DNA of 64,000 nucleotides from Caecitellus pseudoparvulus. Its lineage: Eukaryota; Protista; Bigyra: Bicosoecida. The DNA is taken from assembly GCA_965644315.1 (NCBI GenBank), contig CBFFRQ010000068.1, positions 1,054,001 through 1,118,000 of the forward strand. Direction: 5' to 3'. Below, one piece after another: positions 16,330 to 43,599 of this stretch. The notes under the pieces were generated by a model. The model saw only the letters and a program-made list of their open reading frames with translations, had not been told where the DNA came from and did no database searches. The position numbers and the translations under genes are program-made. How positions within the stretch are numbered: the first letter of the stretch is position 1; the number at the start of each line of letters is the position of its first letter.

Positions 16330-18878
16330 ATGGCTCGCAAGCGCGCCGCTGGCAAGCGTGCAAGTTACAACCGTGCATGCGCAGAGGTATGTTCCGTTAG
16401 GCTGGGCACTGCGTGCCTTTTGATTACCTGCTGCTGCCTGTGATTGTGGCACTTCCGACAAACAATTTCCGCCGGCTTGCACTTCCGCCCGGCGCGATCG
16501 AACCTCATCCCGCGCTACCCCGCATCCCGATTCGCACAGTGCTCGAAAGTGAAGAAAAAATGCGATGGCTCTCGCCCCTGCTCCCGTTGTGCCCGTCTGA
16601 GTGCGTTGCTCAGAGAGCCGAGTCTCGCCGGGCCACCCTGACCGCCACGTCACCTTTCTGATGCACAGGTTTGCCGTGCACGGACAAAATCGACCACCGC
16701 TTCCGGCGACGGGAACGGGACGACGAAGAGTCGCTGCCAGGGGATGCTGCAGTACACGTGGCTAAACGCCAAGCAGTGGCTGCGGCGGGATCCCGATCCC
16801 CCGTGCCTGGCACTCCGGCTTTCGCAGAGCCGCCTGTGCCAGTGTCATCAGGCGTCACCGCCGCTATTTCATCCCTGGCCGATGGCCCCGGGGGCTCTGC
16901 CTTGCCCCATGCCACCCTTCTTGGTTTGGGTCTCTTTCCTTTGCTGCAGAGCGCCATGGCCCAGGCAGGCGGTGCGGGCGCGTCGTCCGCCATGAGCATG
17001 GCTGCCCTAGGAGGCCCCTCCATGGCGCTGGCCGCACTCGCCAACCCAAACAACGCGCTGAACCAAATCCTCAGTCAAACGCTGATTAATGCCAACGCTG
17101 CCGCCACCGCAAGTGCCTCCAGGCCCATGCTGGACTGGAATCAGGCCGTGGGCGACCTGTCCACTCCACAGCCTCCTCCACGCATGTGCCTGGGCGCCAC
17201 AGCAGCTGCAGCAGCACACCTAGCCTGCCACATTCCCGATACCCAAGGAGCAGCGTCCTCTTTCCCAGCACAAGGGCGCGCATTGTCCCAGCGCGACACG
17301 ATGCAGGGTGACGCATGTGGTCAGCTTGCCCCTCCAGGAGCGCCCCCACGTGTGATTCCCCCTACGGCGTCAGCAGATGCATGCTTTCTGCAGGACGTGT
17401 CTCAAAGCACTCAATTACCGTGTGGTCTCGAGGGGGAGGACCCCATCGTGCACTTCTCCAACTCTATGCGACTTGCCAAGTGCCCCCTGCCAACTTGCCG
17501 CATGGTGTTCGACGCTAAGTTCAATACCCCCGTCTGTGTACATGCCAACAGGGGCATAGCTGGCTTGTTCAACTGGTGCACTCACGATCTCATCACCCCC
17601 ATCACACGCGTCCCGGCCTACATGCTGTGGATTGATCCAGTCGCTGCCAAGTCGCGGCTTGCTGCAACCCTGGCGGCGAAGCAGCGAGGCCTCGGGCAGT
17701 ACTCAGTTCGCAGTACCTTCCTGCGCCCCAAGTCCACCACGAGAGGTGGTTTCTTTGACCCCCTTGAGGCAGAGTGGGAGCGCTTCTCCTGCACGGAGGT
17801 CGTGCGCGTGGAGCGAGCCAGCAATGGCGCCACTATCCTGTCCGTCACCCTCATGGACATGCGTGAGCTGGCGCCAGAGCAAGCTGCTGTGTCCAGTGAG
17901 GTTAAGTTGAAGGCTGTTGCCTTGGGGAACCTGCTGTCCAAGGCTCTGGAGGAGACCAATCGACGCGCGGAACAGACCCTGGACGGTGTGCCGCCCGTTT
18001 CCCCGCCTCCCCGGCCACCAGGCACACCAGCTCGCACTGCCCTGGAGGCTTGGCACGGTGCCCGCACAACGCTGGCAGAGCTGCCCCCGGCCAAGCGCAT
18101 GTTCGAAGCCCGCACATCTCTGCACTTGGGCCAGACCAAGAGCCTCCTCACTACATCCGTGCGCGCGCTGGGCTGCATGGCGTACCTTGCCTACATGGTT
18201 GGCATGTTCTGGACTGGCCACCCAGCAGCAGTCGAAGCCTTGAGAGCGTTTGATGCTTCGCGGCTTGCGCCTGTTGACGAAGCTGGTGCTTCCACCACAA
18301 GCGGCACGCAAGGCAAGAGTCACCCCACCATGTTCAACGCGGAGGCTGGGACAAAGACCACCGCCACTGTGGATGCAGCCAAGAGCACCCAGCAGCACGA
18401 AACTCCCTCTGTGGACCCCCCTGCAGCCGCCCCAGCTCTGGACAGCCTTTCGGCTGCTGCCATGGCAGCTTTGCAGGCCGAGATCCACGACGCCCGCCTT
18501 CGGGGAGAGCAGCTTGCGCAGTCAGCCGGCACTGCTTCGTCCAAGACGAGCGGTGATGGCCGCGAATGGCCCGAAGATGCGCACAGTGCGGCGTCTCGTG
18601 CGACTCACACCGCTGCTGGCGACGTTGGGGCGCCTGCAGTTCCAAAGGCGGATGGTGACCCTGCCATGACCCATGCGGCTCATGATGCCTTGTCTACATC
18701 TGGCTTTACTCTCGGGTCAGCATTTTCCGACACTGGCTTTGATGAGCTCATGCATCCAATGGCAGCAGGCGGCGTGCGCCATGCGGATGGTGCTCCCACG
18801 GACATGTCAGCTGTCGCCGCGCAGGGCGGCGTCATCCACCTGCTCACGCTGGGCGGCGCCTCCCCCCTCATGTTGTAG
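16330..18878 (+). CDS. Zn(II)2Cys6 (GAL4-type) transcription factor with central PAS-like region; exons 16330-16386, 16540-16600, 16669-18878
   Basis: Splicing GT-AG introns 16387-16539 and 16601-16668 yields RACAECSKVKKKCDGSRPCSRCARLSLPC, an exact Cx2Cx6Cx5Cx2Cx6C, in frame with ORF 16671-18878. Confidence 0.88.
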
Positions 18879-18916
18879 GCACTGAATGTGAATACTCTGT
18901 ACTCTCGCGGCATTCT

Positions 18917-18926
18917 CAATGCATTG
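18917..18926. terminator. Palindromic CAATGCATTG, candidate shared 3'-end/polyadenylation signal between convergent genes
   Basis: Lies in the 52-bp spacer between stops at 18878 (+) and 18931 (-); the same (C/G)AATGCA motif follows many other stops in the window. Confidence 0.5.
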
Positions 18927-18930
18927 CACG

Positions 18931-21900
18931 TCACTTTTTGTCTGCTTCATGCTCCTCCTCTTCTTCCACCACAGCCACCATCATGGGGGCTGGGGGCGCG
19001 AGGCGCCGTCTGCCGCCTGGTGGCGGGCCAGGTGCAGCCGCCCCACTGCTGCGGGGTGGCGGCTTGGGTTGGAAGAATGCAGCCCCACCTTCGCCTGCGC
19101 CAGGTGGGTGGCGCGGCGTGGGGACTTCCCCTTGCCGGAGGGTCTGCGCCTCGGGGTCCATTGTCATGGCTTGCATGACCAAGGACCCACGCTTGTTGCG
19201 TGCCCTGTTCTTGACACTAATGGTGTCAATGAGGCTCGCACGCCGCTTGTGGGGTGCTGTGACGGGGGAGTGGTCCTCCTGGTCATCGTCCAGCAGGTCG
19301 CGCCTGGTCATGGTGCGCAACGTCAGCGCCTCCTTTGACGCAGACGCATCCGACACCTTGACCGCATCCAAGGCTTCAGATACAGCTGCGTCATCCACAG
19401 CAGCTTCCAGGCCCAAGCCATGGCTCGGCATGCCTTCGTTGGGGTCTGTCAGCACCATGACCCAGAAATAGAAGCGATGCACGAAGCGGAAGGGGGATAC
19501 CTCGACTGCCTTCCCCAGGTTGAAGGTACCAGCCTGGTGCACCAACACTGCTCGCGCCAAGGCAAGGCAGCGGACGTCCACATCCTGTGGTTCCATTCGC
19601 GTGAAGAAGTCGATGATCTCTGGCTCTTGTACGAAGTCACACACGTACCGCCAGGAGGCCTTCTGGCCCAGCAGTAGGCACATAGCCGAGCCAATCATGG
19701 AGGAAGCAGTGTCCACCGGCTCCTGGCGCCGGAACGCGTTCAAGTCTGCTCGGTCCACATCCAGCAAGCCTCGTCGCACCCATCCCAGTGGAGACCGGCG
19801 AGAAAGCAGCGTCTTGGTCAAGCCCTCCCGCTTCCACATTTTGAGCCGCATGCGAGCACGCCATGCTGCCGAGCGCAGCGCAGCCCGAGATGCGATGGTG
19901 CTGGCGCGGTCCACGACTTTGTTGTTGCTAGCAAGGGCAAAGACCGTAGCCCCCATCACCCGGTGCGGGAACTTGGGTGGCGGGCCGTCGCGGTCCAGCA
20001 CTCGACTACTCTTCCCAGACAGCTTCAGGAAGGAGTGGGCCTTGCGCAGACCACCATCCGAGCGCATGCTTGCTGCACTGCCCTTGCTGGCCAGAGACTT
20101 GCTCCGTTCATCGTCAGAGTGGCCCTCCTCACTGACAGACTGAAGCGCATGGTGCTGCAGAGAAGCACTGGAGGCGCCGTGCTGAGAGCGTGCACGCTCT
20201 CGAGCCAGCTCATTGCGTTCCCGCCTGCGTTCCAGCTTGCGCTCGCGGATGACGCGATCGATGTACTGTACAGAAGACAGCCTCGCAGACCGCGGCAGCG
20301 GAATATCCTGCGCCCTCATGCGTGAGTCAGAGATCAGGGAGACCAGCCACCTCAGCATTTTCGCCAGAACAGTCCCGGTCTGGTACTCCTTTTCATAGTG
20401 CATGGACAGCAGGCGGCGGGCGCCGAGGATGGTGGCGATGTAGTGACGCTTGCGGTCACTCAGGTCTGCTCGGCGGAAGTTCATCATGCGGGCAAGCAAA
20501 TCATCACCCTTCTGCATCAGATCTTGCGCGCTGGACCACTCGGGCACCTTGTCGAAAAGTACACACACGCAAGCACCGAAGCACGCTAGGGGCTGAATGG
20601 TGGAGTCCATGCCTGCCATGATGGCAACGTCTGCTCCTTTGACCGTGGACAGCTGATGCCGGGCCTCTCGGAGCTGCACAGGAGGCTCATCTGGCGTTTT
20701 TGTACGCAGGATGCTAAGCTCCACGTCCTCGTCATCGCTTTCACTGTCAATGACTTCCTCCTCCCGGTGAGATGCCGCGCTGGTGGTCCTCGGAGACTCA
20801 CCACGGGGACTGCCAGCTCGCCGGCGCTCCTTCCTGTCAGCCCGCTGACCAGCGAACAGGCGCCGGAAGTGCTCCAAGTGCTCTGGGGCCAAGGCGTACC
20901 CCTTCTCCGCGAGGACTTCCCCGATGTCCTTCCCATCCGCCGCTTCGGCAGCAGCTGCAGCCGCTGCTGCGGCAGCCGCCTCTGCCGGGTTCTTGTACCC
21001 CATCTCCCGGAAGATCTCCACGATCTCCTTGTCAATGGCTACACCAGCCATGCCCCGCAGATTGGAATCCTCATCTGGCACCCAGTATGCCATGATGAGG
21101 CACCAGTTGTGCAACACTGCAAGCGCGGCGAACGAGGCACCGACGGCCCCTGCCTCAGTGGCCGTGATGCCTTCTTCTTTCTCTTCACCCGCAAAGGCAG
21201 TCTTGCCGGCGGAGGACATATCTGTGTACTCATCGTCGTGAGGACCGGCAGCACTGGCACGCCCGTCCTTGTAGTCCGTGATACCCACTGCCCGCTTGAC
21301 AATTTCCATGGACTTGGCAACATCCAAGGTGTGCTTGGGGTGGCGCCGCAAAATCTCGCGAGCGACCCGGCGTGACAGTGGCGCCAGCATGGAAGGGTGC
21401 ACCATGGAAAGCTTCATGACGAAGCCCTTCTTGCGAATCACTTTTTTGGCCGTGGTCCAGGATGGCTTAGGCACGTTCAAGAGCGTGCACAAGGCGCCTG
21501 CAATGATGATCATGTCTTCTGTCGGCTCTGCCACGCGCGACAGCTCCAGCAGCATGTCCACGGTGAGGCAATCTAGGATGCGCTTCATGTTCTCCATGAG
21601 CTCAGGCGTCACCTTGATCTGAGCAAGTTCTTCCTCATCCACCTCATCTTCTGTCTTCTCCTGCACAGCATCGTCCGAAGAGTCACTCGCTTCAGCAAGC
21701 TCATCGTCGTCGCTGGCGTCTGCTAGCTCACCAGCGTCAGCGACACCAGCGTACTCTCCAACAAGGCCATCCTCCATGCTGTCCAAGCCTTGTAGCACCC
21801 GCTGATGAGCTTCGACGGTCTTCAACTCATGGTGAGGCCGCCAGAAAGAATTGTACAGGCAGTAGTGGTGCAAGAGGTCAAACACAGGATACACAATCTC

Positions 21901-24900
21901 TGGACTTGCCACCAGCACGTCCGGGGCAGCAGTGTCCTTGCTCATAACCTGGTCCCCCGTCTTTCCTTCTGAGTCGCGCCCGGGGGCTTTGGGCACAGGC
22001 GCGGCCTCAGCGTCAGAGCCACTGCCAACGCGTTCTGCGCTTTCTGCTTGATGAAGTCTGGCTGCTCGTTGCGGCGACGTGAAGTGTGCTCTTGCAGGAA
22101 CAGGGCTATCAGACTTTGAGTCACTCGCCGCGGGATCCGCGTCTTCGGAGTGGCTGTTCACAGGAACGCTGGTCAAGATGGCACCGAAACGTGACGCCAG
22201 ATCCTCGTTGTGCAAATTGCACACCCGAGGCAAAGCGATGTCGTGGCGCGGGTGCTTGCGGAGAATTGCACGGGAAGCGCAGCGCAAAGCCGCAGCCAGG
22301 CGCTGGGGCTGGGTCTTGGCCATGGTCTCGCGGAACGCTGGGTTCACAGCCAGCGCACGGCCAGCTTCCCAAGATGGGTGTGGATCACCGTGCAACGTTG
22401 ACAGTGCGCAAGCGACGATCACCATGGCGATTGAGGGAGAATCCGTGTCGAACGCAGCTTCCACTGCCTTGGGATTCAACTTTGAAAGCAAGTCGTGCAG
22501 GAGGTCAAGGTGTGCAGGCGTCACCCACAACGTCTTGTTCTCCGGAAAAACCCCAGACTCTGGTGGAATTTCCTCAAAGTCGTCTTTCACGCCAGCCTCT
22601 TCGTACCGCGCTTCTGAGGTCTGCTTGGCCACGTTTGCCATTGCTTCCAAATCATCTTGATCTCGCTTGCGGGCAAGAGCAGCTGCCTTGCCACGACCAA
22701 GCATGCCCCGGGCTGCAGCTTGGATGATGGTAGCAGCTGCATCTGCCTCGCGCAAAGCGTCGTTCCTCCAGCGCTTCAGGCGATTGGCCAGCTTGCGAGC
22801 GACGTGTCCCCGCCAGGCAGCTTGAATGCGAGAAGCTGCATCGTGCTCCATGGCCGCCTGAAGCTCGGCTTTACGGGCCCTGGCCTCTGCTCTGCGCCGA
22901 GCGTTCTGCGGGCCTTGGTACCCAACCTCTCGCGGGTTCACAACGTCCTTTCGCCCACCTCGTCGCTGTTGGGCTTCCTTCAAAGCCATGCGGCCATATG
23001 GCGAGATGATGGCAGACACTGCATCTTCCTCGTCGCTACTCTCCTCGGAAAGGTGGTCATCGACGCCCCCTGCAAAGTCCAGCGCATCCAGCACAGGCTG
23101 CGCTTCGTGTACGAGGGGAGTCTGCCCTGTTGCCTGCCGGATACTGTCGACGGTGCTGATGGGACCGGTGGCTGCCTCAGATGCCTCATCATCACTCCCA
23201 TCTGGAATAGTCCCGTCCGGATGCACGAACACAGGCTCCAAGCCACCCACTGCATCATCAGCAGCAAGTTGACGAGCCATCGCAGCCTGAAGAACTGCGC
23301 TATCCTTGGGCGGCACCCACTTCACATCAACATGCGCTTCGGCTGCATGCTCGCCCGCTGCACTGCGACCGAATACGTCATCCACTGGTAACCATTGTGG
23401 GTTGTCCGCGACGTCAACTGCATCAGGTACTGCAAGTTGGAGAGAATCATCGTCTTCCTCACGACCCTGCTTAGATTCTTGTGCAGCGCCGTCAGCATCT
23501 GCAAGGTCCTGAACAGTCAAGCCAGTAGCTGAGGCTGCAACATCATCCGCCACAGGCAACCCAGACAATGAACACACCGCCGCCGTGCCCCGTGCCAGCA
23601 GTGACTCCAGAGGCACCAACACCGTGCCCAGCTCACGACCACTCGCGTCCACCACCGCCACCTCCGCCACGGCGTCACGACCACGCACGCCAGACACAGG
23701 CAGCTCCAGGCTCTCGCTCCAGTGCGGCTCACCGTCCGCACCCACATCCACCACACTGCTCGTCACCTCAGACCCCCCCACCCGCACACGCACAGCAGTG
23801 CCCACACACCCCGCGTCACCGCCCGCGCCCACCACCAGGTCCCGCGCCGACATCGGGTCCACACTCACCGTGCCAGCGTGCAGGGACGGGTCCCCGCCCG
23901 ACGACAGCACGTGCTCGCCATCGGGTGCGTACGACACACGGGCCTGCACCTGCCCCGCCGCACGACCACTCCCATCACGCAGATCGTGCCAGGTCCCGTC
24001 AGGACCAGAGTCAGACACCTTCACAGCCGGCGCCGTGCTGCGTGACGCCGCACTGCTCACCGCTGCAGGCACACTCTGCCCGCTGGCAGCCACCACCGCC
24101 GCCGTGCCCCGTGCCAGCAGTGACTCCAGAGGCACCAACACCGTGCCCAGCTCACGACCACTCGCGTCCACCACCGCCACCTCCGCCACGGCGTCACGAC
24201 CACGCACGCCAGACACAGGCAGATCCAGGCTCTCGCTCCAGTGCGGCTCACCGTCCGCACCCACATCCACCACGCTGCTCGTCACCTCAGACCCCCCCAC
24301 TCGCACACGCACAGCAGTGCCCACACCCCCCGCGTCACCGCCCGCGCCCACCACCAGGTCCCGCGCCGACATCGGGTCCACACTCACCGTGCCAGCGTGC
24401 AGGGACGGGTCCCCGCCCGACGACAGCACGTGCTCGCCATCTGGCGCGTACGACACACGGGCCTGCACCTGCCCCGCCGCACGACCACTCCCATCACGCA
24501 GATCGTGCCAGGTCCCGTCAGGACCAGAGTCAGACACCTTCACCGCCGGCGCCGTGCTGCGTGACGCCGCACTGCTCACCGCTGCAGGCACACTCTGCCC
24601 GCTGGCAGCCACCACCGCCGCCGTGCCCCGTGCCAGCAGTGACTCCAGAGGCACCAACACCGTGCCCAGCTCACGACCACTCGCGTCCACCACCGCCACC
24701 TCCGCCACGGCGTCACGACCACGCACGCCAGACACAGGCAGCTCCAGGCTCTCGCTCCAGTGCGGCTCGCCGTCCGCACCCACATCCACCACACTGCTCG
24801 TCACCTCAGACCCCCCCACCCGCACACGCACAGCAGTGCCCACACCCCCCGCGTCACCGCCCACGCCCACCACCAGGTCCCGCGCCGACATCGGGTCCAC

Positions 24901-27900
24901 ACTCACCGTGCCAGCGTGCAGGGACGGGTCCCCGCCCGACGACAGCACGTGCTCGCCATCGGGTGCGTACGACACACGGGCCTGCACCTGCCCCGCCGCA
25001 CGACCACTCCCATCACGCAGATCGTGCCAGGTCCCGTCAGGACCAGAGTCAGACACCTTCACAGCCGGCGCCGTGCTGCGTGACGCCGCACTGCTCACCG
25101 CTGCAGGCACACTCTGGCCGCTGGCAGCCACCACCGCCGCCGTGCCCCGTGCCAGCAGTGACTCCAGAGGCACCAACACCGTGCCCAGCTCACGACCACT
25201 CGCGTCCACCACCGCCACCTCCGCCACGGCGTCACGACCACGCACGCCAGACACAGGCAGATCCAGGCTCTCGCTCCAGTGCGGCTCGCCGTCCGCACCC
25301 ACATCCACCACACTGCTCGTCACCTCAGACCCCCCCACCCGCACACGCACAGCAGTGCCCACACCCCCCGCGTCACCGCCCGCGCCCACCACCAGGTCCC
25401 GCGCCGACATCGGGTCCACACTCACCGTGCCAGCGTGCAGGGACGGGTCCCCGCCCGACGACAGCACGTGCTCGCCATCGGGTGCGTACGACACACGGGC
25501 CTGCACCTGCCCCGCCGCACGACCACTCCCGTCACGCAGATCGTGCCAGGTCCCGTCAGGACCAGAGTCAGACACCTTCACCGCCGGCGCCGTGCTGCGT
25601 GACGCCGCACTGCTCACCGCTGCAGGCACACTCTGCCCGCTGGCAGCCACCACCGCCGCCGTGCCCCGTGCCAGCAGTGACTCCAGAGGCACCAACACCG
25701 TGCCCAGCTCACGACCACTCGCGTCCACCACCGCCACCTCCGCCACGGCGTCACGACCACGCACGCCAGACACAGGCAGCTCCAGGCTCTCGCTCCAGTG
25801 CGGCTCGCCGTCCGCACCCACATCCACCACACTGCTCGTCACCTCAGACCCCCCCACCCGCACACGCACAGCAGTGCCCACACCCCCCGCGTCACCGCCC
25901 ACGCCCACCACCAGGTCCCGCGCCGACATCGGGTCCACACTCACCGTGCCAGCGTGCAGGGACGGGTCCCCGCCCGACGACAGCACGTGCTCGCCATCTG
26001 GCGCGTACGACACACGGGCCTGCACCTGCCCCGCCGCACGACCACTCCCGTCACGCAGATCGTGCCAGGTCCCGTCAGGACCAGAGTCAGACACCTTCAC
26101 CGCCGGCGCCGTGCTGCGTGACGCCGCACTGCTCACCGCTGCAGGCACACTCTGCCCGCTGGCAGCCACCACCGCCGCCGTGCCCCGTGCCAGCAGTGAC
26201 TCCAGAGGCACCAACACCGTGCCCAGCTCACGACCACTCGCGTCCACCACCGCCACCTCCGCCACGGCGTCACGACCACGCACGCCAGACACAGGCAGCT
26301 CCAGGCTCTCGCTCCAGTGCGGCTCGCCGTCCGCACCCACATCCACCACACTGCTCGTCACCTCAGACCCCCCCACTCGCACACGCACAGCAGTGCCCAC
26401 ACACCCCGCGTCACCGCCCACGCCCACCACCAGGTCCCGCGCCGACATCGGGTCCACACTCACCGTGCCAGCGTGCAGGGACGGGTCCCCGCCCGACGAC
26501 AGCACGTGCTCGCCATCGGGTGCGTACGACACACGGGCCTGCACCTGCCCCGCCGCACGACCACTCCCATCACGCAGATCGTGCCAGGTCCCGTCAGGAC
26601 CAGAGTCAGACACCTTCACCGCCGGCGCCGTGCTGCGTGACGCCGCACTGCTCACCGCTGCAGGCACACTCTGCCCGCTGGCAGCCACCACCGCCGCCGT
26701 GCCCCGTGCCAGCAGTGACTCCAGAGGCACCAACACCGTGCCCAGCTCACGACCACTCGCGTCCACCACCGCCACCTCCGCCACGGCGTCACGACCACGC
26801 ACGCCAGACACAGGCAGCTCCAGGCTCTCGCTCCAGTGCGGCTCGCCGTCCGCACCCACATCCACCACACTGCTCGTCACCTCAGACCCCCCCACCCGCA
26901 CACGCACAGCAGTGCCCACACCCCCCGCGTCACCGCCCACGCCCACCACCAGGTCCCGCGCCGACATCGGGTCCACACTCACCGTGCCAGCGTGCAGGGA
27001 CGGGTCCCCGCCCGACGACAGCACGTGCTCGCCATCTGGCGCGTACGACACACGGGCCTGCACCTGCCCCGCCGCACGACCACTCCCATCACGCAGATCG
27101 TGCCAGGTCCCGTCAGGACCAGAGTCAGACACCTTCACCGCCGGCGCCGTGCTGCGTGACGCCGCACTGCTCACCGCTGCAGGCACACTCTGCCCGCTGG
27201 CAGCCACCACCGCCGCCGTGCCCCGTGCCAGCAGTGACTCCAGAGGCACCAACACCGTGCCCAGCTCACGACCACTCGCGTCCACCACCGCCACCTCCGC
27301 CACGGCGTCACGACCACGCACGCCAGACACAGGCAGCTCCAGGCTCTCGCTCCAGTGCGGCTCGCCGTCCGCACCCACATCCACCACACTGCTCGTCACC
27401 TCAGACCCCCCCACCCGCACACGCACAGCAGTGCCCACACCCCCCGCGTCACCGCCCGCGCCCACCACCAGGTCCCGCGCCGACATCGGGTCCACACTCA
27501 CCGTGCCAGCGTGCAGGGACGGGTCCCCGCCCGACGACAGCACGTGCTCGCCATCGGGTGCGTACGACACACGGGCCTGCACCTGCCCCGCCGCACGACC
27601 ACTCCCATCACGCAGATCGTGCCAGGTCCCGTCAGGACCAGAGTCAGACACCTTCACCGCCGGCGCCGTGCTGCGTGACGCCGCACTGCTCACCGCTGAA
27701 GGCACACTCTGCCCGCTGGCAGCCACCACCGCCGCCGTGCCCCGTGCCAGCAGTGACTCCAGAGGCACCAACACCGTGCCCAGCTCACGACCACTCGCGT
27801 CCACCACCGCCACCTCCGCCACGGCGTCACGACCACGCACGCCAGACACAGGCAGCTCCAGGCTCTCGCTCCAGTGCGGCTCACCGTCCGCACCCACATC

Positions 27901-30900
27901 CACCACACTGCTCGTCACCTCAGACCCCCCCACTCGCACACGCACAGCAGTGCCCACACCCCCCGCGTCACCGCCCGCGCCCACCACCAGGTCCCGCGCC
28001 GACATCGGGTCCACACTCACCGTGCCAGCGTGCAGGGACGGGTCCCCGCCCGACGACAGCACGTGCTCGCCATCGGGTGCGTACGACACACGGGCCTGCA
28101 CCTGCCCCGCCGCACGACCACTCCCATCACGCAGATCGTGCCAGGTCCCGTCAGGACCAGAGTCAGACACCTTCACCGCCGGCGCCGTGCTGCGTGACGC
28201 CGCACTGCTCACCGCTGCAGGCACACTCTGGCCGCTGGCAGCCACCACCGCCGCCGTGCCCCGTGCCAGCAGTGACTCCAGAGGCACCAACACCGTGCCC
28301 AGCTCACGACCACTCGCGTCCACCACCGCCACCTCCGCCACGGCGTCACGACCACGCACGCCAGACACAGGCAGCTCCAGGCTCTCGCTCCAGTGCGGCT
28401 CACCGTCCGCACCCACATCCACCACACTGCTCGTCACCTCAGACCCCCCACACGCACACGCACAGCAGTGCCCACACCCCCCGCGTCACCGCCCGCACCC
28501 ACCACCAGGTCCCGCGCCGACATCGGGTCCACACTCACCGTGCCAGCGTGCAGGGACGGGTCCCCGCCCGACGACAGCACGTGCTCGCCATCTGGCGCGT
28601 ACGACACACGGGCCTGCACCTGCCCCGCCGCACGACCACTCCCATCACGCAGATCGTGCCAGGTCCCGTCAGGACCAGAGTCAGACACCTTCACCGCCGG
28701 CGCCGTGCTGCGTGACGCCGCACTGCTCACCGCTGCAGGCACACTCTGCCCGCTGGCAGCCACCACCGCCGCCGTGCCCCGTGCCAGCAGTGACTCCAGA
28801 GGCACCAACACCGTGCCCAGCTCACGACCACTCGCGTCCACCACCGCCACCTCCGCCACGGCGTCACGACCACGCACGCCAGACACAGGCAGATCCAGGC
28901 TCTCGCTCCAGTGCGGCTCACCGTCCGCACCCACATCCACCACACTGCTCGTCACCTCAGACCCCCCCACCCGCACACGCACAGCAGTGCCCACACCCCC
29001 CGCGTCACCGCCCACGCCCACCACCAGGTCCCGCGCCGACATCGGGTCCACACTCACCGTGCCAGCGTGCAGGGACGGGTCCCCGCCCGACGACAGCACG
29101 TGCTCGCCATCTGGCGCGTACGACACACGGGCCTGCACCTGCCCCGCCGCACGACCACTCCCATCACGCAGATCGTGCCAGGTCCCGTCAGGACCAGAGT
29201 CAGACACCTTCACCGCCGGCGCCGTGCTGCGTGACGCCGCACTGCTCACCGCTGAAGGCACACTCTGCCCGCTGGCAGCCACCACCGCCGCCGTGCCCCG
29301 TGCCAGCAGTGACTCCAGAGGCACCAACACCGTGCCCAGCTCACGACCACTCGCGTCCACCACCGCCACCTCCGCCACGGCGTCACGACCACGCACGCCA
29401 GACACAGGCAGATCCAGGCTCTCGCTCCAGTGCGGCTCACCGTCCGCACCCACATCCACCACACTGCTCGTCACCTCAGACCCCCCCACCCGCACACGCA
29501 CAGCAGTGCCCACACCCCCCGCGTCACCGCCCACGCCCACCACCAGGTCCCGCGCCGACATCGGGTCCACTTCCAGCAATCCAAAGAAGTTGGGGTCTTC
29601 TGTGGCATGCAATCGTGTTCTACGGATGTCTGGTGTGTACGAGATGGCACTTTGCAGCTTTCCTGCATAGCGGCCGGACTTGTCGTGCAGGTCGTGCCAT
29701 TTGCCATCTTCACCGCTGTCCGAGACTGTGACGTCTGCGTTCTGTGGAAAAGGAGCTGCTCGCGTTTGGGAAGCTGCTGCTGTGGATGGAGACGCTGCCT
29801 TGGTTGCCACGCTGCGGGGAACCACGCCTCCCAACGCAATAGTAGCCGCCGCTGTTCCAGAGTGCAACAGCTCTTCCAATGGTACAAATGCCGAGCCCAC
29901 ACCGTGACCAGTGGCAGCCGCTCTCCCTGCTGGGCGATGGAACTGGACCTCCAGCAGGGCATCATCATCCACGTGAAGGTCTTGAACGGGGACACGGATA
30001 GAAGACCTGGCTGGCATGCCCGAGCGGTCATCTATGGGGACACGAACCTTCCCACGAGTCCCCGCTATCCCAAAGGTCAAGTAGCTGCCAGGGGGAGGCT
30101 TGGCGTCTCGGCCTGCCATTGACATCTGGGTCAGGGAGGATGGTCTAATGGTCAGGTAGCCTTCGTGCACATGGGGGTGTGCATCGCCTGCGATGACATT
30201 CTTCACATCTGGCGTGTACTCGATGCCAGCACGCATGCGCCCAGCAGTGCTGCCGTCCTTTCTGGATGCGAAGAGAATCCACGGGCCGTCGCGGGTGCGG
30301 CCCAGGTGTGCAGAAACACCTGCCGCTTGGGAAGGGTCTGCCTTGGGGGGCAGGAACCGACCACCGGGGAAGGGCCCTCGAGCTTTCCCGACACGGGGGG
30401 AACGAGCACCCCCGATTCGCGCAATGCGTGCTTGACCTCTGGGCTGAGAGGGGGGCAGCGAGAGCCCGGTCTTCGGGTTACGGTTGAAGTCCAGGCAGTG
30501 CTCAAGCCCTGTTTGCAGCAAGGTGTACAGGGGAATGCGGATGAGACCCATGCGGTCGCCCCCCATTCGGTCGAAGATGTGCAGCTCAACAAAGGTGTGC
30601 TTGCTTAAGGGGGTTCCATCCAGTGGGACACGGATGGGCTCGGTCAGCATGGGCACGCGACGGGTGTCCACGGTCATGGACTGCACCTCTCTCCGGCCAA
30701 GCCGGACAGAGATGAATGCTGACCGAGAGCCGACGATGCCCTTCAGGCCCTTGATGCCATTCAGACTCAGCTGGATGTCACCTTCCATCACAGGGACGAC
30801 TGCCCGCTGCTTCAGCCGGGTGCGTGCACCACGTGCGATACGGAAGCGATCGTACCGTGCGGCGTTTCGGTAGTCTACGCCCACCTGGCGTTGAAACCTG

Positions 30901-31730
30901 TACCGCTTCTGCTTGATGCGAACTTGGCGCAGGCGATACTTGTCGCGTGGGCGGGCGACACGTTTCTGCTTGCCACCATAGATGTGCTTGGCCACAGACA
31001 GCCGTGCGGTGATGAGCTCTTGGGCGCCACGCATGCCTTTGTTGTGCCCGTACCCCAACTTCCGTAGGGTGGCGGGGGTCAGGTTTGGCAGCTCTTTGGT
31101 GCGCAGGGCTTGACTCAGGAGTGTTGCTGAAGAGTCCACCTGCCTCATGTCACGCAGCCTGCCACGGTTTGGGCCACGCCGGTTACCCCAATGCTTCCGG
31201 CCGCTCCGGGCAGCCGGTGCACGGGCACCATGGGCAACCATGGCGCCAGCTGCGGAAAGGGAGCCGCTGGACCGAATCCCAGCGCCAGACGCGGCATGGG
31301 GAACACCTGGCATGGGAGGTCGGACGCCCTCTTCTGCGAAGACGGGCAGGGCAACCGGGGCTGGTGGTGATGTTGGGCAGCGTAACTTCGGCGTTTCTTC
31401 GAGGTGAGGGGGGGGACTTCGTGTGGGCTATGTGAAGCACTCACGGTGATACTTTGACTCGCTGTAGCTCATGTAGGCAGCTTGCTCTCCTAGAAACGCA
31501 TCCAGGCTGTCCGCATCTGTCGCTGAGGAGCCCCCGGACCGCCCGGCCCGGCGTCGTGCACTGGCCATCTGGTGGTTGGCACGTGCTCCGAGCGATTCTG
31601 GCATATGGGAGGAGGAGGGCCGAGAAAATGCATATGGAGCGCCTGGTATCACGCCACAGCACAGGCCACAAGGCCCTGCACGGCATGGGGTGCTTTGCGT
31701 ACGACGAGACACTTCGATGGCATGCATGTC
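18931..31730 (-). CDS. Giant (~4,200 aa) protein: basic N-terminus, ~14 C2-like domains, 2 IQ motifs, 4 dynein-stalk MTBD-like modules; split by a 1-bp frameshift at ~28444-28449; start uncertain
   Basis: ORFs 28434-31313 and 18931-28437 are continuous in repeat register. A phase-1 intron 31444-31334 (GTGAGT..TCGCAG) joins the upstream ORF 31428-31742 in frame. IQAAWRGHVARK and IQAAARGMLGR are present. Confidence 0.85.
23575..29570. repeat. 519-bp (173-aa) coding tandem array, ~11.5 periods with 12 C2-like cores, near-identical
   Basis: Equivalent positions recur at 23722, 24241, 24760, 25279, 25798, 26317, 26836, 27355, 27874, 28393, 28911 and 29430 (spacing 519, once 518). Confidence 0.98.
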
Positions 31731-34131: not shown

Positions 34132-37100
34132 ATGGCAGCATCTTCAGCTGTATCAGTCCGCGATACCCTCCTTGGCCTCTCTGCCAGTGATGCAGATGCC
34201 CGGATTTCGGCGCTGCGCACGCTGGCCAGCCTCTCAACTTCCGCACATGGCCTCACCAAGCTGCTTGCAGACAGCACCTCCTTGCCCCGCATGTGCTTCT
34301 TCGTGGCAGGGTTAGCAGAGAGCCCTGTCTTGGTGGATAAAGAGACGGCGACGCTTTCTCTTTCCATCCTTTGGGCGATGCTACAGAGCGATGGTACGCT
34401 TGCCTGCACGCAGCGCTGGCCCTGGCACAGGGCATACGTAGGCCTCCTCCTCGCAGATTCGCTGGCAAAAGCCATCGCAGCGGAGTGTGGTTCGCGCCCA
34501 ATTATGTTGGCATTGAAGATTTCAGAAGCTGATGCTCAGATTGCCATCCCTGCGTTTCACCTGCTGCGGAGGCTGGACAAGCTCGGTAAGCCCAGCGACC
34601 ATCTTGACCTGCGCTTCTCCTCGCACCGTGCTTTGCCCCGCTCTCGTCCAGAGAAGGGCACGGCTATGACAGCTCGCTTGGAAGGGTGTCTGGACCTCCT
34701 GCTGGAGTGCCTGGCCTTGGAGCCTGCACCACCGGCGCTTGCTATGGAGCTGCACGCTGCTTGCGTACAGCTCCTCGCAGCCTATTGCAAGTCGAACGGT
34801 GAGAGGACCGCCCTGCGTGCGTGGATCAAAGTGCTGCTGTAGTTCCTTATGCTGCTCTCCTTCCCCAGACAACAATATGCGCCTGTTTGTGCGCAAGTAT
34901 GGCATCTCGCAGCTGCTCGAGCTCCTCCCTGCTGCGACGGCTGCAAGTCAGTCACCCCTGCATGGCCTCGCTGCACGCTTCGTCGAAGGGACCTTCCAGC
35001 TATTCGCTGCTGCCTGCAAGAATGAAGCGTACTTGCACGCCCTTCTAGGTGTAGATGGTGCCTGCCAGTCAATCACGTTGGCCTTGGACGCTTGCGCAAT
35101 GTTTCCGCAAGCCGCAAGGTTTGGTTGTACGCTTCTCGCGACTCTCAGCTCACATGACGTGGCATGCGAAGAGCTTTGGGCGGCAAAGGCACCTTCCATG
35201 CTCTGGCGCATCATCCTCGATTACGCGCTGCACGGGGCCCTTGCACCCGGCAGCGGAGCACAACCTGAGCCAGCGTCAGGTCGGGTATGGAACTCTCCAC
35301 CCACTGCAGTCCAAGGCCGGGTGGTCATGAAAGGTGCAACTGGAGCCATGTGGGCGCTGCTATCTTCCCCTCCGCCTTCAGTCGTAGCTGGCTCGGCTCT
35401 GGCAACAGAGGGTGCAGATGTCTGGACGCCCCTCGCGTCGCGGTACAAATTGCCGGCTGCGCTTCCAACTCAGCTGGCAGCCTTGGGCCCGGAAAACGCG
35501 CAGCACTTTTCCCCTGCGAGATTTTCCCACTTCCATTCCTCCACCCTGGCTGGCCCTGGTGGTACGCCGCCCAGCATGACGCACCAACTTTCGCTGCATT
35601 TAGGTGAGTCTGCCGTTCCTTCACCGCTGCCACCAGGCATTCTGATCACGTCAACAACAGGGTCCAAGCAAATGCGTGGGCCAGGTGGCATCAGCTTCAA
35701 TTCTGCCCGTGTGTGGGCGCTGCCTGCTCGCTATTTGCACGCATTGCCAACCACTTTGGATCCGCTGCTGGCGCACTCAGCGACGGCGAGCAGCGTATGG
35801 AGGCGGGAATGCGTGGGCGTAGGGCAGATCTCTGGTTCTGCGAGTCACAGGGGGGCCGTATCATGGCATGCTATTCTCCCTGGTGCATGGAAGACGCTGA
35901 TTCTGCAGCACGCACGCGCACCTGGCCTGCCATCCACTCCGCGCTCCTCAGAGCTTGGGCAGGACAAGGACGGCGGCGACGGCGAGGAGGGGGGTGACCT
36001 CGCCCATGGCTTGGGAAGTAGCGGTGCGCTACTGGCGGCAGTTGTCTCGCGTGCAGCTGTGTCCCATCCAGCTGCAGTGCACGGGGGTGGAAACGTCGGG
36101 CCCGGTGCGCGACCCTTTCCTGACGCGGACTTGACCTCGGCCAAGTCTGCAGCAGCGGCGCTGGCGGATGCAGCGAGCAAGCTGAGCCAAGAACTCCTCA
36201 CAGTGTCATCATTTGTCCCCCGAAGTGCCACTGACACACCCTGCTCTGTCGGGCTGGACGCAGCTGGCACGGACGCGTCCAGCGCGGCGGAGCAAACGGG
36301 GGAGGGAGTGGCAAGTGGTCCCCGGCCGGCAAGCTCCCCTGCTGAGGAGGTTGGAGATTTCGTACCGCCGAGGCTGGCAGTCAGTGATGTGAGAGATGGG
36401 GCCAGTGCCCACCTCGGTGCCGGTGCCCTGTCGCTTGAGGGCGAGGGCATAGTGCAAAGCCTTGAACCTGGCAGCAGTCGAACTGCGGCTTCAAGCATCG
36501 CTTCCGGTAGCCCTGGCTCTGAGCACTCACAGGAGTCAGATCCTGCCGCATCTCTCCCTGTTGTGCACAGTGTTCGTGGCAAGCAGCGTCTTCGTGGCTC
36601 ACGCTCGTCAGGCTCGCTCAAAAGCGCGGGCAAGACGGTTCTTGGCGGCCTGCCGACTGCCGCCAGTGCCCCAATGCCGTCTCCAGCACCAGATGGCCCG
36701 ACTTACCCGGCGTGCTCAGCATTCAAGGCAGAGGAGGTGCCAAGCCCGGCCAGTCCTCCATATGATCCGAGTTGTGAGACGTGGGCCCATGTTCCGCACT
36801 GGTTCCCAGAGCTGCAACTTGACGCCGCAGTGGACGCATTTGCACGCTTAGCCTGGCGAGACGGAGAGCAGAATGCTGCGGCTTGGGCACATGCCTTGGC
36901 ATCTGCCTCACCTGCGTCGGACACAAAGCCGGGCTGCCTCATGTCCTTCCTGTGGCAGAACTTTCCTCACCTTGCGCCAGTGGACGCTGCAGAGAGCCTT
37001 TTCGCCGAGGGGGGCCAGTCTCCAACACAATGGGCCTGGCACTGTCTCCCGGGACCGCGCAGCACACCCGTGCTGCTTCCCGCAGTGGTGGCGGATGTCA

Positions 37101-40100: not shown

Positions 40101-40990
40101 CCAAGGCATGTGTTCCTCCACCCCACGTCCTGCGGGGCAGTGCCCCGTGCCCCCCTAGCGCCAGCTGCGCGTCCCTTCTGAAGCACCTGAGCCTGCCGAA
40201 CAGTGCGCTGGCTGCCCTGGCTGGGACTGCCCCCATGTCAGCTCTGGCGGCAGCCTTCGGTCCCAGCCTGGCAACGTGGCCGCTCTTCCTGCCTAGCTTG
40301 CCTGAAGCCGATGTGCAGGTCATGTGCTCCACTGCTGCCTCGGTAACGGCGAGCCTCGCTGGCTGGTGTGAGGGCGCGGAAGACATGGGTGCTGGCGCGT
40401 TTCCCTGGCCGCTGGTCCTGGCACCCTTCAAGAATCTTCCCTTGGGGGGCGTGGCCGACTTGATGGCTACACTGAAGCTCGCACCCAAGTCCCGTGGCGC
40501 ACAAGCAGCTGCGGAGGAAAACCCTGCCCAAGGTGAAGCAGCCAGCACTCTCTCCCGGCGAAGCTCCAAAGCTGCACTACCCAAGGCACGCTCGTCGGCG
40601 AGCATGCGCAGTGCAGGTGCGCTTTCGGGCACCGGGGGTAGCACTCCGCGAAGTTTAGGAGTCGGTGGCGAGCTGGCGGGCCTTGTGTCATCCTGGCTGC
40701 GCGCGGGGGCGCCTAGTGCCAAGACTCCGCTGTTGATGCCCACAGCCATGGCCCGTGCCATCAAGACTTGTGCCGGCCTTGCCAAGGCGGCCGCCCAGGC
40801 TGCAAAGAAGAGTGTAGGCAGGAAGAAGCGTGTGGCCAAGAAGGGCGCAGGACGGACACGGCAGGCCCGGCGAACGCCCACAAAGCGCCCCACCACGGGT
40901 GGCAAAGGCAAGAAAGGCACCACTAAAAAGAAGAAACCCGTGCCAAGCGGCACGCCCAAGAAGCGGGTCGCCGCAGGAGCCGGTACGTAG
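34132..40990 (+). CDS. Cytosolic carboxypeptidase (M14D, CCP1/Nna1-like tubulin deglutamylase) with N-terminal ARM-like region; introns in the 5' part
   Basis: FESRFESGNL, HTQWFFF, AYCFPYTYTDL, RVHPGE, PFLNPDGV, DLNRHW, DFHGHS and SFTIEAS give the complete zinc and catalytic set; Lys/Arg-rich tail. Confidence 0.93.
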
Positions 40991-43422: not shown

Positions 43423-43599
43423 GGCAGGCAGGGGGTCTGGCGCTGGCGTCGGCTCTGGATGGGAAGCCGTAGTGTTTCTTCTTCGCTTTGTCCCTCGCTC
43501 TGGCCGCCCCCTCGCCGAACGACTGAAGACCGGGGCCAGTGGAGCAGCGAGAGTGCAGTCGATTTCCGCACGGGCCAAGGCAGGCCACTGCGGACCAAA

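What the first reader, a model, noticed from the sequence alone, without database searches (positions are those of the whole stretch)
18931..31730. Giant motorless protein combining ~14 C2-like domains, 2 IQ motifs and 4 dynein microtubule-binding-domain-like modules: a candidate membrane-microtubule tether
Seen: one minus-strand gene ordered as basic N-terminus, 2 diverged plus 12 homogenised 173-aa beta-rich repeats, 2 IQ motifs (~22690-22840), then 4 related helical modules separated by acidic disordered linkers. Known: the repeats fit the C2 pattern (V.V..ARDL...V.V.....S.V......P.W.E.L.L.....V.V.D....LG...VPL.SL...W.DL......G.V...VSY), IQxxxRGxxxR binds calmodulin-family proteins, and the modules fit the dynein stalk-tip pattern. 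I see no AAA P-loop. Inference: a multivalent linker holding microtubules (for example cortical or flagellar-root bands) to a membrane or spacing them like a ruler, regulated through calmodulin. I do not recognise this architecture from any described protein.
Basis: partly seen in the sequence, partly recalled or inferred. Interest (0 to 1): 0.92.

Follow-up and report, generated by a model that had tools for sequence, protein, structure and literature searches.

The report
Motorless protein with four dynein microtubule-binding domains
A flagellated marine protist encodes a roughly 4,100-residue protein with no motor that joins 14 C2-like domains, two calmodulin-binding IQ motifs and four true copies of dynein's microtubule-binding tip, and it belongs to a widespread protein family that I could not find described.

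Summary
One minus-strand gene (18931-31313) encodes:
- a very basic N-terminus;
- 2 diverged plus 12 near-identical 173-aa repeats;
- 2 IQ motifs (Pfam E 2.9e-9);
- 4 related helical modules.

The single frame break is a run of six G (28444-28449) where the other eleven copies have seven. I take it for an assembly error, but this is unproven.

The modules are homologues of the dynein microtubule-binding domain (MTBD):
- A profile of the four modules alone hits dynein MTBDs in the PDB at E 3e-5.
- A profile built only from motorless family members hits them at E 3e-16.
- An AlphaFold model (pLDDT 91) superposes on dynein MTBDs at Z 14, rmsd 2.5 Å.

There is no AAA ring and no stalk.

The repeats are probably C2 sandwiches. 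Three weak lines of evidence agree. The repeats are acidic and do not look calcium-binding, so the membrane half of the "tether" idea is weak.

The genome holds five such motorless paralogues beside at least 20 real dyneins. At least 150 protein clusters elsewhere match the module profile, mostly of non-dynein length, among them Cafeteria, Cyanophora and Fabomonas; many also carry IQ motifs. A non-dynein chain bound to Toxoplasma intraconoidal microtubules, probably ICMAP2, shares the fold (Z 8.2).

Most likely function: a static, multivalent microtubule binder or cross-linker. Microtubule binding was not tested.

The parts
18931..31313 (-). Whole gene: about 4,127 codons if the single frame break is read through. 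No intron was seen in the part covered by RNA-library contigs.
   Evidence: ORFs. Collinear contigs from RNA libraries span 19017-23328 and 18910-24050. Of 40 listed strain differences, 28 fall on third codon positions; 27 are synonymous and 13 are not.
30789..31313 (-). Very basic N-terminal region (175 aa, pI 12, net +35). It includes a motif at 30945-31118 that is shared with the paralogues.
   Evidence: The motif is 41% identical over 61 aa to paralogue P0125/C57, E 6e-7. The same motif is visible by eye in paralogue C69a.
30207..30788 (-). C2-like domain 1 (diverged, basic, pI 11.3)
   Evidence: Alignment A3. Language-model neighbours: C2, score 0.95, 181 shared features. Charge.
29628..30164 (-). 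C2-like domain 2 (diverged; 47% identical to the homogenised unit)
23302..29582 (-). Array of 12 homogenised 519-nt (173-aa) C2-like repeats. The last unit has a diverged C-terminal half ending near 23302.
   Evidence: 0-8 nt differences per unit. C2 evidence. DNA-run depth rises from about 82 to 540-850 over the repeat part laid (23484-24050), about nine- to ten-fold beyond 23676.
28444..28449 (-). Frame break: a homopolymer of six G (C on the + strand) where the other eleven comparable copies have seven.
22693..22836 (-). Two IQ motifs (IQAAWRGHVAR and IQAAARGMLGR)
   Evidence: Pfam PF00612, E 2.9e-9, 2 stretches. Positions.
21823..22545 (-). MTBD-like module 1. Core pI 9.0, with an insert of about 95 aa, predicted disordered from its composition, before the last helix.
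21064..21627 (-). MTBD-like module 2. Core pI 10.1, with an insert of about 45 aa before the last helix.
20854..21012 (-). Element between modules 2 and 3 (FREMGY...poly-Ala...HFRRLF) that is conserved in the paralogues. Function unknown.
   Evidence: The similar stretch in P0129 was seen.
20308..20685 (-). MTBD-like module 3 (compact, pI 9.2)
19432..19794 (-). MTBD-like module 4 (compact, pI 6.1). This is the module that was folded.
   Evidence: AlphaFold2 pLDDT 91.3, pTM 0.85. Foldseek: the top 39 PDB hits are all dynein MTBDs. VIA-align Z 14.0, rmsd 2.5 Å over 117 residues. ESM Atlas TM 0.74.

Best explanation
**What it is (shown).** This is a real, transcribed gene of a flagellated, stramenopile-like marine protist. 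It encodes a non-motor protein of about 4,100 residues. From N- to C-terminus:
- a highly basic N-terminus;
- 14 C2-like beta-sandwich domains, 12 of them recently amplified or homogenised;
- two IQ motifs;
- four domains homologous to the globular microtubule-binding domain at the tip of the dynein stalk.

It has no stalk coiled coil and no AAA+ ring.

**How it most likely works (inferred).**
- Each MTBD docks on the tubulin lattice as dynein's does, at the intradimer groove, once per 8 nm.
- With no stalk to shift helix registry, binding is static rather than cycled by ATP.
- Four MTBDs on flexible linkers of 65-175 residues give avidity. They could hold neighbouring dimers, protofilaments or microtubules together, for example in flagellar roots or cortical bands.
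- The IQ motifs recruit calmodulin- or centrin-type light chains next to the first MTBD and may tune binding with calcium.
- The C2-like array forms a projection or spacer tens of nanometres long, with an unknown partner. The partner is more likely protein than lipid.
For: **MTBD homology**
- A profile of the four modules alone, searched against the PDB, gave dynein heavy chains for 36 of 37 hits, best E 3.2e-5.
- Profile A5, built from 43 modules of motorless multi-module proteins only, gave dynein heavy chains for all 60 hits shown. The best was DNAH6 at E 3.3e-16, covering positions 6-119 of 129.
- Pfam MT (PF12777) matches 25 of 48 multi-module family members. None of them shows a dynein AAA domain.

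**Fold**
- Module 4 model: pLDDT 91.3.
- The Foldseek top 39 hits are all dynein MTBDs, with TM up to 0.75.
- VIA-align gives Z 14.0, 13.9 and 13.9, while unrelated rows score 3.2 or less.
- In the ESM Atlas, dynein stalk clusters score TM 0.73-0.74 and the next best 0.39.

**Precedent for a motorless MTBD-fold domain on microtubules**
- Chain 9ya2_L of the Toxoplasma ICMT-1 structure matches at Z 8.2 over 120 residues.
- By its numbering and size it is probably ICMAP2. The paper places ICMAP2 between protofilaments 3 and 4 at an 8-nm period, and its loss separates the two microtubules (PMC12819142).

**Other points**
- Module cores 1-3 are basic, pI 9.0-10.1.
- IQ motifs. IQ recurs in 10 of 48 family members.
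- C2.
- Real gene: RNA-library contigs cover it collinearly and stop just past the stop codon. Differences between strains are biased to third codon positions.
- Flagellate: at least 20 dynein heavy chains and two RSP3 genes.
Against: - Microtubule binding was not tested.
- In dynein, affinity is set by the stalk and helix H1 (PMC6629372). A stalk-less domain could rest in a weak-binding state.
- Module 4 is not basic (pI 6.1), and several inserts and linkers are acidic.
- Pfam MT and C2 both miss this protein itself.
- The C2 model is poor (pLDDT 42).
- The alignment used to fold module 4 (A4) contains some fragments of real dyneins. This may have helped the model towards the MTBD fold.
- The frame break could be real.
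- The identity of chain 9ya2_L as ICMAP2 is my inference. The paper's list of accession codes does not match the PDB title on which microtubule 9YA2 is.
Confidence: 0.6

Rival explanations
1. This is the reader's specific version, a membrane-microtubule tether. The C2 array binds a membrane, with or without calcium, while the MTBDs hold microtubules, and calmodulin acts as the switch.
For: - The repeats are C2-like, and many multi-C2 proteins tether membranes (established knowledge).
- The first C2-like domain and the N-terminus are strongly basic and could bind acidic lipids.
- An earlier unchecked note in this genome reports a motorless MTBD gene with a prenylation signal.
Against: - The 12 homogenised repeats are acidic, pI 4.7.
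- They do not reach Pfam C2.
- As I read the loop motifs, most canonical Ca2+-binding aspartates are missing.
- No transmembrane segment or lipid anchor was found.
- Three of the five paralogues have the MTBDs without a detectable C2 array, so C2 is not core to the family.
- C2 folds in centriole and cilium proteins such as CEP120 bind proteins or tubulin instead (recalled, not tested).
Confidence: 0.2
2. The modules keep the MTBD fold but no longer bind microtubules. In this reading they are protein-protein interaction or scaffold domains in a large structural protein of some other assembly.
For: - There is no stalk.
- Modules are only 18-27% identical to each other and about 8-16% identical to dynein MTBDs.
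- Modules 1 and 2 carry long inserts before the last helix.
- Module 4 is not basic.
Against: - The family consensus keeps the hallmark core (the ..P..-hydrophobic helix-..LLG..P.W.. pattern) and basic residues in the helix after the conserved Trp. In the HMM alignment that helix lies opposite the dynein stretch I take, from memory of dynein MTBD structures, to be its tubulin-contacting H3.
- The only non-dynein structure with this fold in the PDB search sits on a microtubule.
Confidence: 0.2
3. The locus is broken. In this reading the G6 frame break is real, so only a 959-aa N-terminal product is made, or the two halves are separate genes.
For: - The assembly shows a stop two codons after the break.
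- I could not check the break in reads, because the repeat collapses in short-read contigs.
- A metagenome scan for this copy found nothing.
Against: - The break is a one-base loss in a G7 homopolymer inside a near-identical repeat, which is a typical long-read or polishing error.
- The downstream 3,168-codon frame is fully open.
- The C-terminal part of that frame, about 1,500 codons of 18973-23497, shows differences between strains that are mostly synonymous and no indels.
- It is covered by RNA-library contigs.
- The closest paralogue has the same order of parts in one 3,396-codon frame.
Confidence: 0.15

Closest known systems
Dynein heavy chain microtubule-binding domain (Pfam PF12777 'MT'; e.g. 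PDB 3ERR, 8I3J, 6RZA)
   Same: - Homologous sequence: E 3.3e-16 with a profile built from the motorless family only.
- Same six-helix fold: Z 14, rmsd 2.5 Å.
- The best matches are axonemal inner-arm dyneins, DNAH6 and DNAH2.
   Different: - No antiparallel stalk coiled coil, AAA+ ring, linker or tail.
- Four copies in tandem.
- Two copies carry long inserts before the last helix.
- This protein itself is below the Pfam threshold.
Toxoplasma gondii ICMAP2 (TGME49_224700), probably chain 9YA2_L of the intraconoidal microtubule structure
   Same: - A large non-motor microtubule-associated protein whose resolved globular domain has this fold: Z 8.2 over 120 residues.
- It sits on the lattice between protofilaments at an 8-nm period and links two microtubules (PMC12819142).
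- No domain was recognised in it by sequence (PMC10774369).
   Different: - Only one resolved domain.
- 8% identity.
- I did not test a sequence relationship.
- No C2 array is reported for it.
- The assignment of the chain to ICMAP2 is my inference.
Motorless tandem-MTBD proteins, undescribed (e.g. Cafeteria roenbergensis KAA0178163.1, Cyanophora paradoxa EP00741_P000183, Fabomonas tropica EP00163_P015671, and four paralogues in this genome)
   Same: - 2-7 MTBD-like modules in proteins of non-dynein length, often preceded by IQ motifs.
- Paralogue C69a has the same order of parts: N-terminal motif, C2-like units, IQ, four modules.
   Different: - Most lack a detectable C2 array.
- Some carry ankyrin, TPR or NACHT domains instead.
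- All are annotated as hypothetical.
Multi-C2 proteins (ferlins, extended synaptotagmins; centriole and cilium C2 proteins such as CEP120 and RPGRIP1L)
   Same: - Tandem C2-type beta sandwiches.
- Dysferlin C2A is the best PDB profile hit.
- Ferlin, Munc13, E-Syt and CEP120 C2 domains are among the Foldseek hits.
- An RPGRIP1 C-terminal C2 cluster is among the language-model neighbours.
   Different: - No transmembrane anchor or SMP domain.
- The repeats are acidic.
- The units are near-identical copies, 14 in a row, fused to MTBDs.

Membership tests
Dynein heavy chain | Ring of six AAA+ modules with P-loops | tested here: not met
   Pfam finds no AAA or dynein motor domain in any piece. The only GxxxxGK[ST] match lies in a disordered insert.
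Dynein heavy chain | Long antiparallel coiled-coil stalk flanking the MTBD | tested here: not met
   The modules align only to the globular core. In the model only a short helix precedes the domain and the last helix ends within it. The flanks are low-complexity linkers, so probably disordered.
Dynein MTBD domain (PF12777 core) | Significant sequence similarity to dynein MTBDs | tested here: met
   E 3.2e-5 with the four modules alone. E 3.3e-16 with the motorless-family profile.
Dynein MTBD domain (PF12777 core) | Reaches Pfam's gathering score | tested here: not met
   No PF12777 hit at E up to 1 for this protein. 25 of 48 relatives do reach E 1e-3 or better.
Dynein MTBD domain (PF12777 core) | Six-helix MTBD fold | tested here: met
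   pLDDT 91.3. Z 14.0, rmsd 2.5 Å over 117 residues to 8I3J, and Z 13.9 to 3ERR. TM 0.74 in the ESM Atlas. Caveat: the input alignment held some real dynein fragments.
Dynein MTBD domain (PF12777 core) | Binds the tubulin intradimer groove | not testable with these tools
C2 domain (PF00168) | Reaches Pfam's gathering score | tested here: not met
   No C2 hit at E up to 1.
C2 domain (PF00168) | Eight-stranded C2 beta-sandwich fold | tested here: inconclusive
   The model has eight strands but pLDDT is 42. Nearly all of the top 50 Foldseek hits are C2 domains, best E 3.5e-3. Language-model neighbours are C2 for two repeats that share 26% identity, scores 0.94 and 0.95. Dysferlin C2A gives the four best profile hits at E 0.5-1.3.
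C2 domain (PF00168) | Calcium-binding aspartates in loops 1 and 3 | not tested
   This is my reading of the motifs only. The loop-3 position reads D-A-S rather than D-x-D, and the loop-1 'DPY' is absent. No structure-based mapping was done.
IQ motif (PF00612) | Reaches Pfam's gathering score; IQxxxRGxxxR consensus | tested here: met
   36.3 bits against a cut-off of 20.3, in two stretches. Both motifs fit the consensus.

The most novel reading that the evidence does not exclude
Dynein's microtubule-binding tip has been freed from the motor and reused as a stand-alone microtubule-docking module. In this reading it founds a widespread eukaryotic family of tandem-MTBD proteins, often with IQ motifs, that I could not find described. 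These proteins would set 8-nm-periodic cross-links or projections on stable microtubule arrays under calcium control. Toxoplasma ICMAP2 would be a distant member already seen on microtubules, and this gene would be the largest example, fused to a 14-unit C2-like ruler.
Probability: 0.45. Interest if true: 0.85.

Novelty: new variant of a known kind. Interest (0 to 1): 0.72.

Why it matters
- I know of no described example of the dynein MTBD working outside a motor, and my searches found none. Here it is at the end of an ATP-driven stalk in none of the family members.
- Stand-alone tandem copies would be a new class of microtubule-associated protein, built from a domain whose tubulin footprint is already known at atomic resolution. 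That makes binding site, periodicity and valency directly predictable and testable.
- The finding gives a fold-level domain identity to the microtubule-bound part of what is probably Toxoplasma ICMAP2. That protein keeps the two intraconoidal microtubules together and is needed for normal rhoptry docking and discharge.
- It offers candidates for the still unidentified proteins that link flagellar-root and cortical microtubules in many protists.
- It raises an evolutionary question: how can an allosterically gated domain become a constitutive binder?

Tried and rejected
- **Pfam on the protein's pieces:** it sees only IQ.
- **Tandem Repeats Finder:** it cannot see the 519-nt period, because its limit is 500. 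I measured the period with a script instead.
- **Word-indexed homologue search with the C-terminal 1,118 aa:** it found only a 99%-identical record filed under Symbiodinium sp. KB8. Low-complexity words probably swamped the candidate list, since the exhaustive HMMER search found the family.
- **Homologue search with the C2 profile A3:** nothing at E up to 10 in the 87-276 aa length range.
- **Local search of the C2 profile against all family proteins:** only marginal hits. The best were P0142 at E 4e-4 and one domain of P0130 at 0.008, in a database of about 170 sequences.
- **Single C2 repeat against PDB sequences:** nothing relevant.
- **Structure of the repeat from a 3-row alignment:** a poor model, pLDDT 42.
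- **P0125, P0129, P0130 and P0122:** I first took them for orthologues in other organisms. They are 98-99.6% identical to paralogues in this same genome, so they do not show conservation across species.
- **Deep profile A4 against the PDB (E 5.5e-42):** discounted, because A4 contains fragments of real dyneins. It was replaced by the clean profile A5.
- **Metagenome scan for the frameshifted repeat copy:** 0 matches.
- **Complex prediction of a module with tubulin:** not run. The tubulin ORFs lack their first exons, and a joined model was not to be built.
- **Literature searches for a motorless dynein MTBD:** nothing found.
- **Reading through the frame break:** not done. The pieces on either side were searched apart.
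Full report
**1. What is in the sequence**

On the minus strand, an ATG-started ORF of 959 codons (28434-31313) and an ORF of 3,168 codons (18931-28437) abut inside a tandem repeat.

- The repeat unit is 519 nt (173 aa). Twelve units carry the same DPMSARDL motif at a strict 519-nt spacing.
- One interval is 518 nt. There a run of seven G is six G, at 28444-28449.
- Units differ from the commonest one by 0-8 nt.
- Two diverged units lie upstream. They are 47% and 26% identical to the homogenised unit.
- Downstream come two IQ motifs and four mutually related helical modules.
- The first 175 residues are extremely basic.
- The long antisense ORFs over the array are a by-product of the G+C-rich repeat.

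I searched the pieces on either side of the frame break separately.

**2. Is it a real gene?**

Contigs from public RNA libraries, at 95-99% identity (so related strains), lie collinearly on the C-terminal third.

- One 4,312-nt contig spans 19017-23328 without a gap. Another set spans 18910-24050.
- These two libraries, X15 and X10, have nothing on 18300-18875 beyond the stop codon. The clear DNA run X1 covers that part fully, and X13, which is probably DNA, covers most of it.
- No indels or splice joints were seen in the coding part.
- Of the 40 listed strain differences, 28 are at third codon positions; 27 are synonymous and 13 are not. The frame is therefore under purifying selection.
- In the DNA run, depth rises from about 82 to 540-850 over the repeat part laid, about nine- to ten-fold beyond 23676. 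That fits roughly ten or more copies.

Contigs cannot show transcript ends, and the repeat collapses in them. Continuity across the array and the state of the G run therefore remain unverified. A one-base loss in a G7 run inside a near-identical repeat looks like an assembly error. I put the odds of that at about 3 to 1.

**3. The organism**

- Neighbouring genes are eukaryotic: a formin, a cytosolic carboxypeptidase, PIP5K and CCT-alpha.
- The best named relatives of CCT-alpha are oomycetes (70% identity) and Cafeteria (67%).
- The assembly is 30.6 Mb. It has at least 20 dynein heavy chains and two RSP3 genes, so the cell has a motile flagellum.
- Proteins 99% identical to two of this genome's MTBD genes, the window gene and paralogue C69a, are filed under "Symbiodinium sp. 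KB8". That record's own CCT-alpha is only 60% identical. I read this as contamination of that assembly by this flagellate.
- The genome does have introns, mostly near 5' ends. The CCT-alpha ORF lacks the first 128 profile positions, and the tubulin ORFs lack their starts. An unseen 5' exon of the present gene cannot be excluded.

**4. The helical modules are dynein MTBDs**

*Sequence*
- A profile made from the four modules alone, searched against all PDB sequences, returned 37 hits. Of these, 36 were dynein heavy chains aligned at their MTBD, best E 3.2e-5.
- An exhaustive HMMER search of 1.84 billion representative proteins found 153 proteins at E 1e-3 or better. Most are far shorter than dyneins and have 2-7 matched stretches. 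True dyneins appear only near E 1e-4.
- Some short hits turned out to be dynein fragments. I therefore rebuilt a clean profile from 43 modules taken only from multi-module proteins of non-dynein length. It matches dynein heavy chains exclusively among the 60 hits shown. The best is DNAH6 at E 3.3e-16, across the whole domain including the last helix.
- Pfam's MT model matches 25 of 48 such proteins, and none has a dynein AAA domain.

*Fold*
- Module 4 folded with pLDDT 91.3 and pTM 0.85.
- The top 39 Foldseek hits in the PDB are dynein MTBDs.
- VIA-align gives Z 14.0 (8I3J, rmsd 2.5 Å over 117 residues) and 13.9 (3ERR, 5AYH). Unrelated chains score 3.2 or less.
- In the ESM Atlas, dynein stalk clusters score TM 0.73-0.74 and everything else 0.39 or less.

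There is no stalk and no AAA ring.

**5. A precedent on microtubules**

The only non-dynein entry in the structural list is chain L of 9YA2, titled as Toxoplasma intraconoidal microtubule 1. It matches at Z 8.2, rmsd 3.7 Å over 120 residues, with chain residues 1207-1455.

- Of the ICMT-1 surface proteins in the paper, ICMAP1 has only 1,232 residues. ICMAP2 has 1,678, with about 10% resolved as a globular domain.
- The chain is therefore most probably ICMAP2. [quoted passage not shown] Its deletion separates the two microtubules (PMC12819142).
- An earlier study found no recognisable domain in it (PMC10774369). Neither paper mentions dynein in this context.
- Caveat: the paper's "respectively" list would make 9YA2 the second microtubule, whereas the PDB title says the first. 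The chain's identity is my inference.

**6. The repeats are probably C2 domains**

- Pfam C2 does not see them.
- Protein-language-model neighbours are C2 clusters for both the homogenised unit (score 0.94; 27 of 30 hits) and the most diverged unit (score 0.95; 24 of 30 hits). These two units share only 26% identity.
- A three-row profile has dysferlin C2A as its four best PDB hits, but at E 0.5-1.3.
- The AlphaFold model is poor (pLDDT 42) yet has eight strands. Nearly all of its top 50 Foldseek hits are C2 domains, best E 3.5e-3.
- I put the C2 fold at about 85%.
- The homogenised unit is acidic (pI 4.7). Only the first diverged unit is basic.
- By my reading of the loop motifs, the calcium ligands are mostly missing. 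This was not tested structurally.

**7. Family context**

The genome has five motorless paralogues:

| Paralogue | Size | Parts seen |
|---|---|---|
| Window gene | about 4,127 codons | N-terminal motif, 14 C2-like units, 2 IQ, 4 modules |
| C69a | 3,396-codon frame | same N-terminal motif, duplicated C2-like units (by eye), an IQ motif, 4 modules |
| C57 | 1,742 codons | 3 modules, no detectable C2 array |
| C69b | 1,840 codons | 2 modules, no detectable C2 array |
| C65 | 1,821 codons | 2 modules in the genome scan (4 in its near-identical protein P0129), no detectable C2 array |

- Outside this genome, relatives include Cafeteria (its four modules are near-identical repeats), Cyanophora and Fabomonas.
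- IQ motifs precede the modules in many relatives: 10 of 48 by Pfam.
- The conserved core of the family is therefore IQ plus tandem MTBDs. The C2 array is a lineage-specific addition.
- Earlier unchecked notes of this scan flag the same kind of gene elsewhere in this genome.

**8. Mechanism**

*Shown:* the domain content, the homology and the fold.

*Inferred:*
- Each MTBD binds the tubulin intradimer site as in dynein (PMC6629372).
- Without a stalk the binding is not ATP-gated.
- Four domains on flexible linkers give avidity and could cross-link neighbouring dimers, protofilaments or microtubules.
- The IQ motifs bring calmodulin-like light chains next to the first MTBD.
- The C2-like array is a long projection or spacer.

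The membrane-tether version is possible but is the weaker half of the idea. A complex prediction with tubulin was left out because it would have needed joined exons.

**9. Verdict**

- The domain calls are right: MTBD and IQ are firm, and C2 is probable.
- The proposed function is plausible for microtubules and weak for membranes.
- The architecture and the family appear undescribed in the literature I could search.

Noticed in passing
window 34739-40990 (+): A 2,083-codon ORF carries the N-terminal and M14 domains of a cytosolic carboxypeptidase, the enzyme type that deglutamylates tubulin. It lies two genes from the MTBD gene. Adjacency in a eukaryote is probably chance.
   Followed up: no
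window 59936-61093 (-); loci L012-L017: The CCT-alpha ORF starts at profile position 129 of 490, and the alpha- and beta-tubulin ORFs lack their first exons. The genome therefore has 5'-proximal introns, although many ORFs run for several kilobases without one.
   Followed up: partly
P0001, P0122 (public records) versus the window and G000:C69: Proteins 99% identical to two of this genome's MTBD genes (the window gene and paralogue C69a) are deposited as 'Symbiodinium sp. KB8' unnamed products on short contigs. That record's own TCP1 is only 60% identical to the window's CCT-alpha. This looks like contamination of that assembly by this flagellate.
   Followed up: partly
G000:C69, about 1267242-1277428 (L007 and L011): The closest paralogue is a 3,396-codon open frame. 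It has the same N-terminal motif, C2-like units in a block that is duplicated nearly identically (about residues 740-1130 and 1340-1700), an IQ motif and four MTBD-like modules.
   Followed up: partly
window 20854-21012 (-) and 30945-31118 (-): Two short elements are conserved among the paralogues and have no known family. One is an N-terminal motif, 41% identical over 61 aa to C57. The other is an element between modules 2 and 3, of the form 'MGY..P.EAAA...GY', around a poly-Ala run.
   Followed up: no
window 23568-28715 (+) and 23585-29731 (+): Very long antisense ORFs (1,715 and 2,048 codons) lie over the repeat array. They arise because the G+C-rich repeat lacks stop codons in those frames, and they are not genes.
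   Followed up: partly
window 9048-11801 (-), 54102-59051 (-), 41413-43578 (-), 13313-15631 (-): Other neighbours are a formin (FH2, E 3e-40), a 1,649-codon PIP5K, an ORF with a photolyase-domain hit, and an ORF with a weak PUMA coiled-coil hit.
   Followed up: no
alignment A6 members (public proteins): Some tandem-MTBD proteins of non-dynein length carry ankyrin repeats, or TPR plus a NACHT/AAA_16 module, instead of IQ motifs. The stand-alone MTBD seems to have been recruited into several architectures.
   Followed up: no
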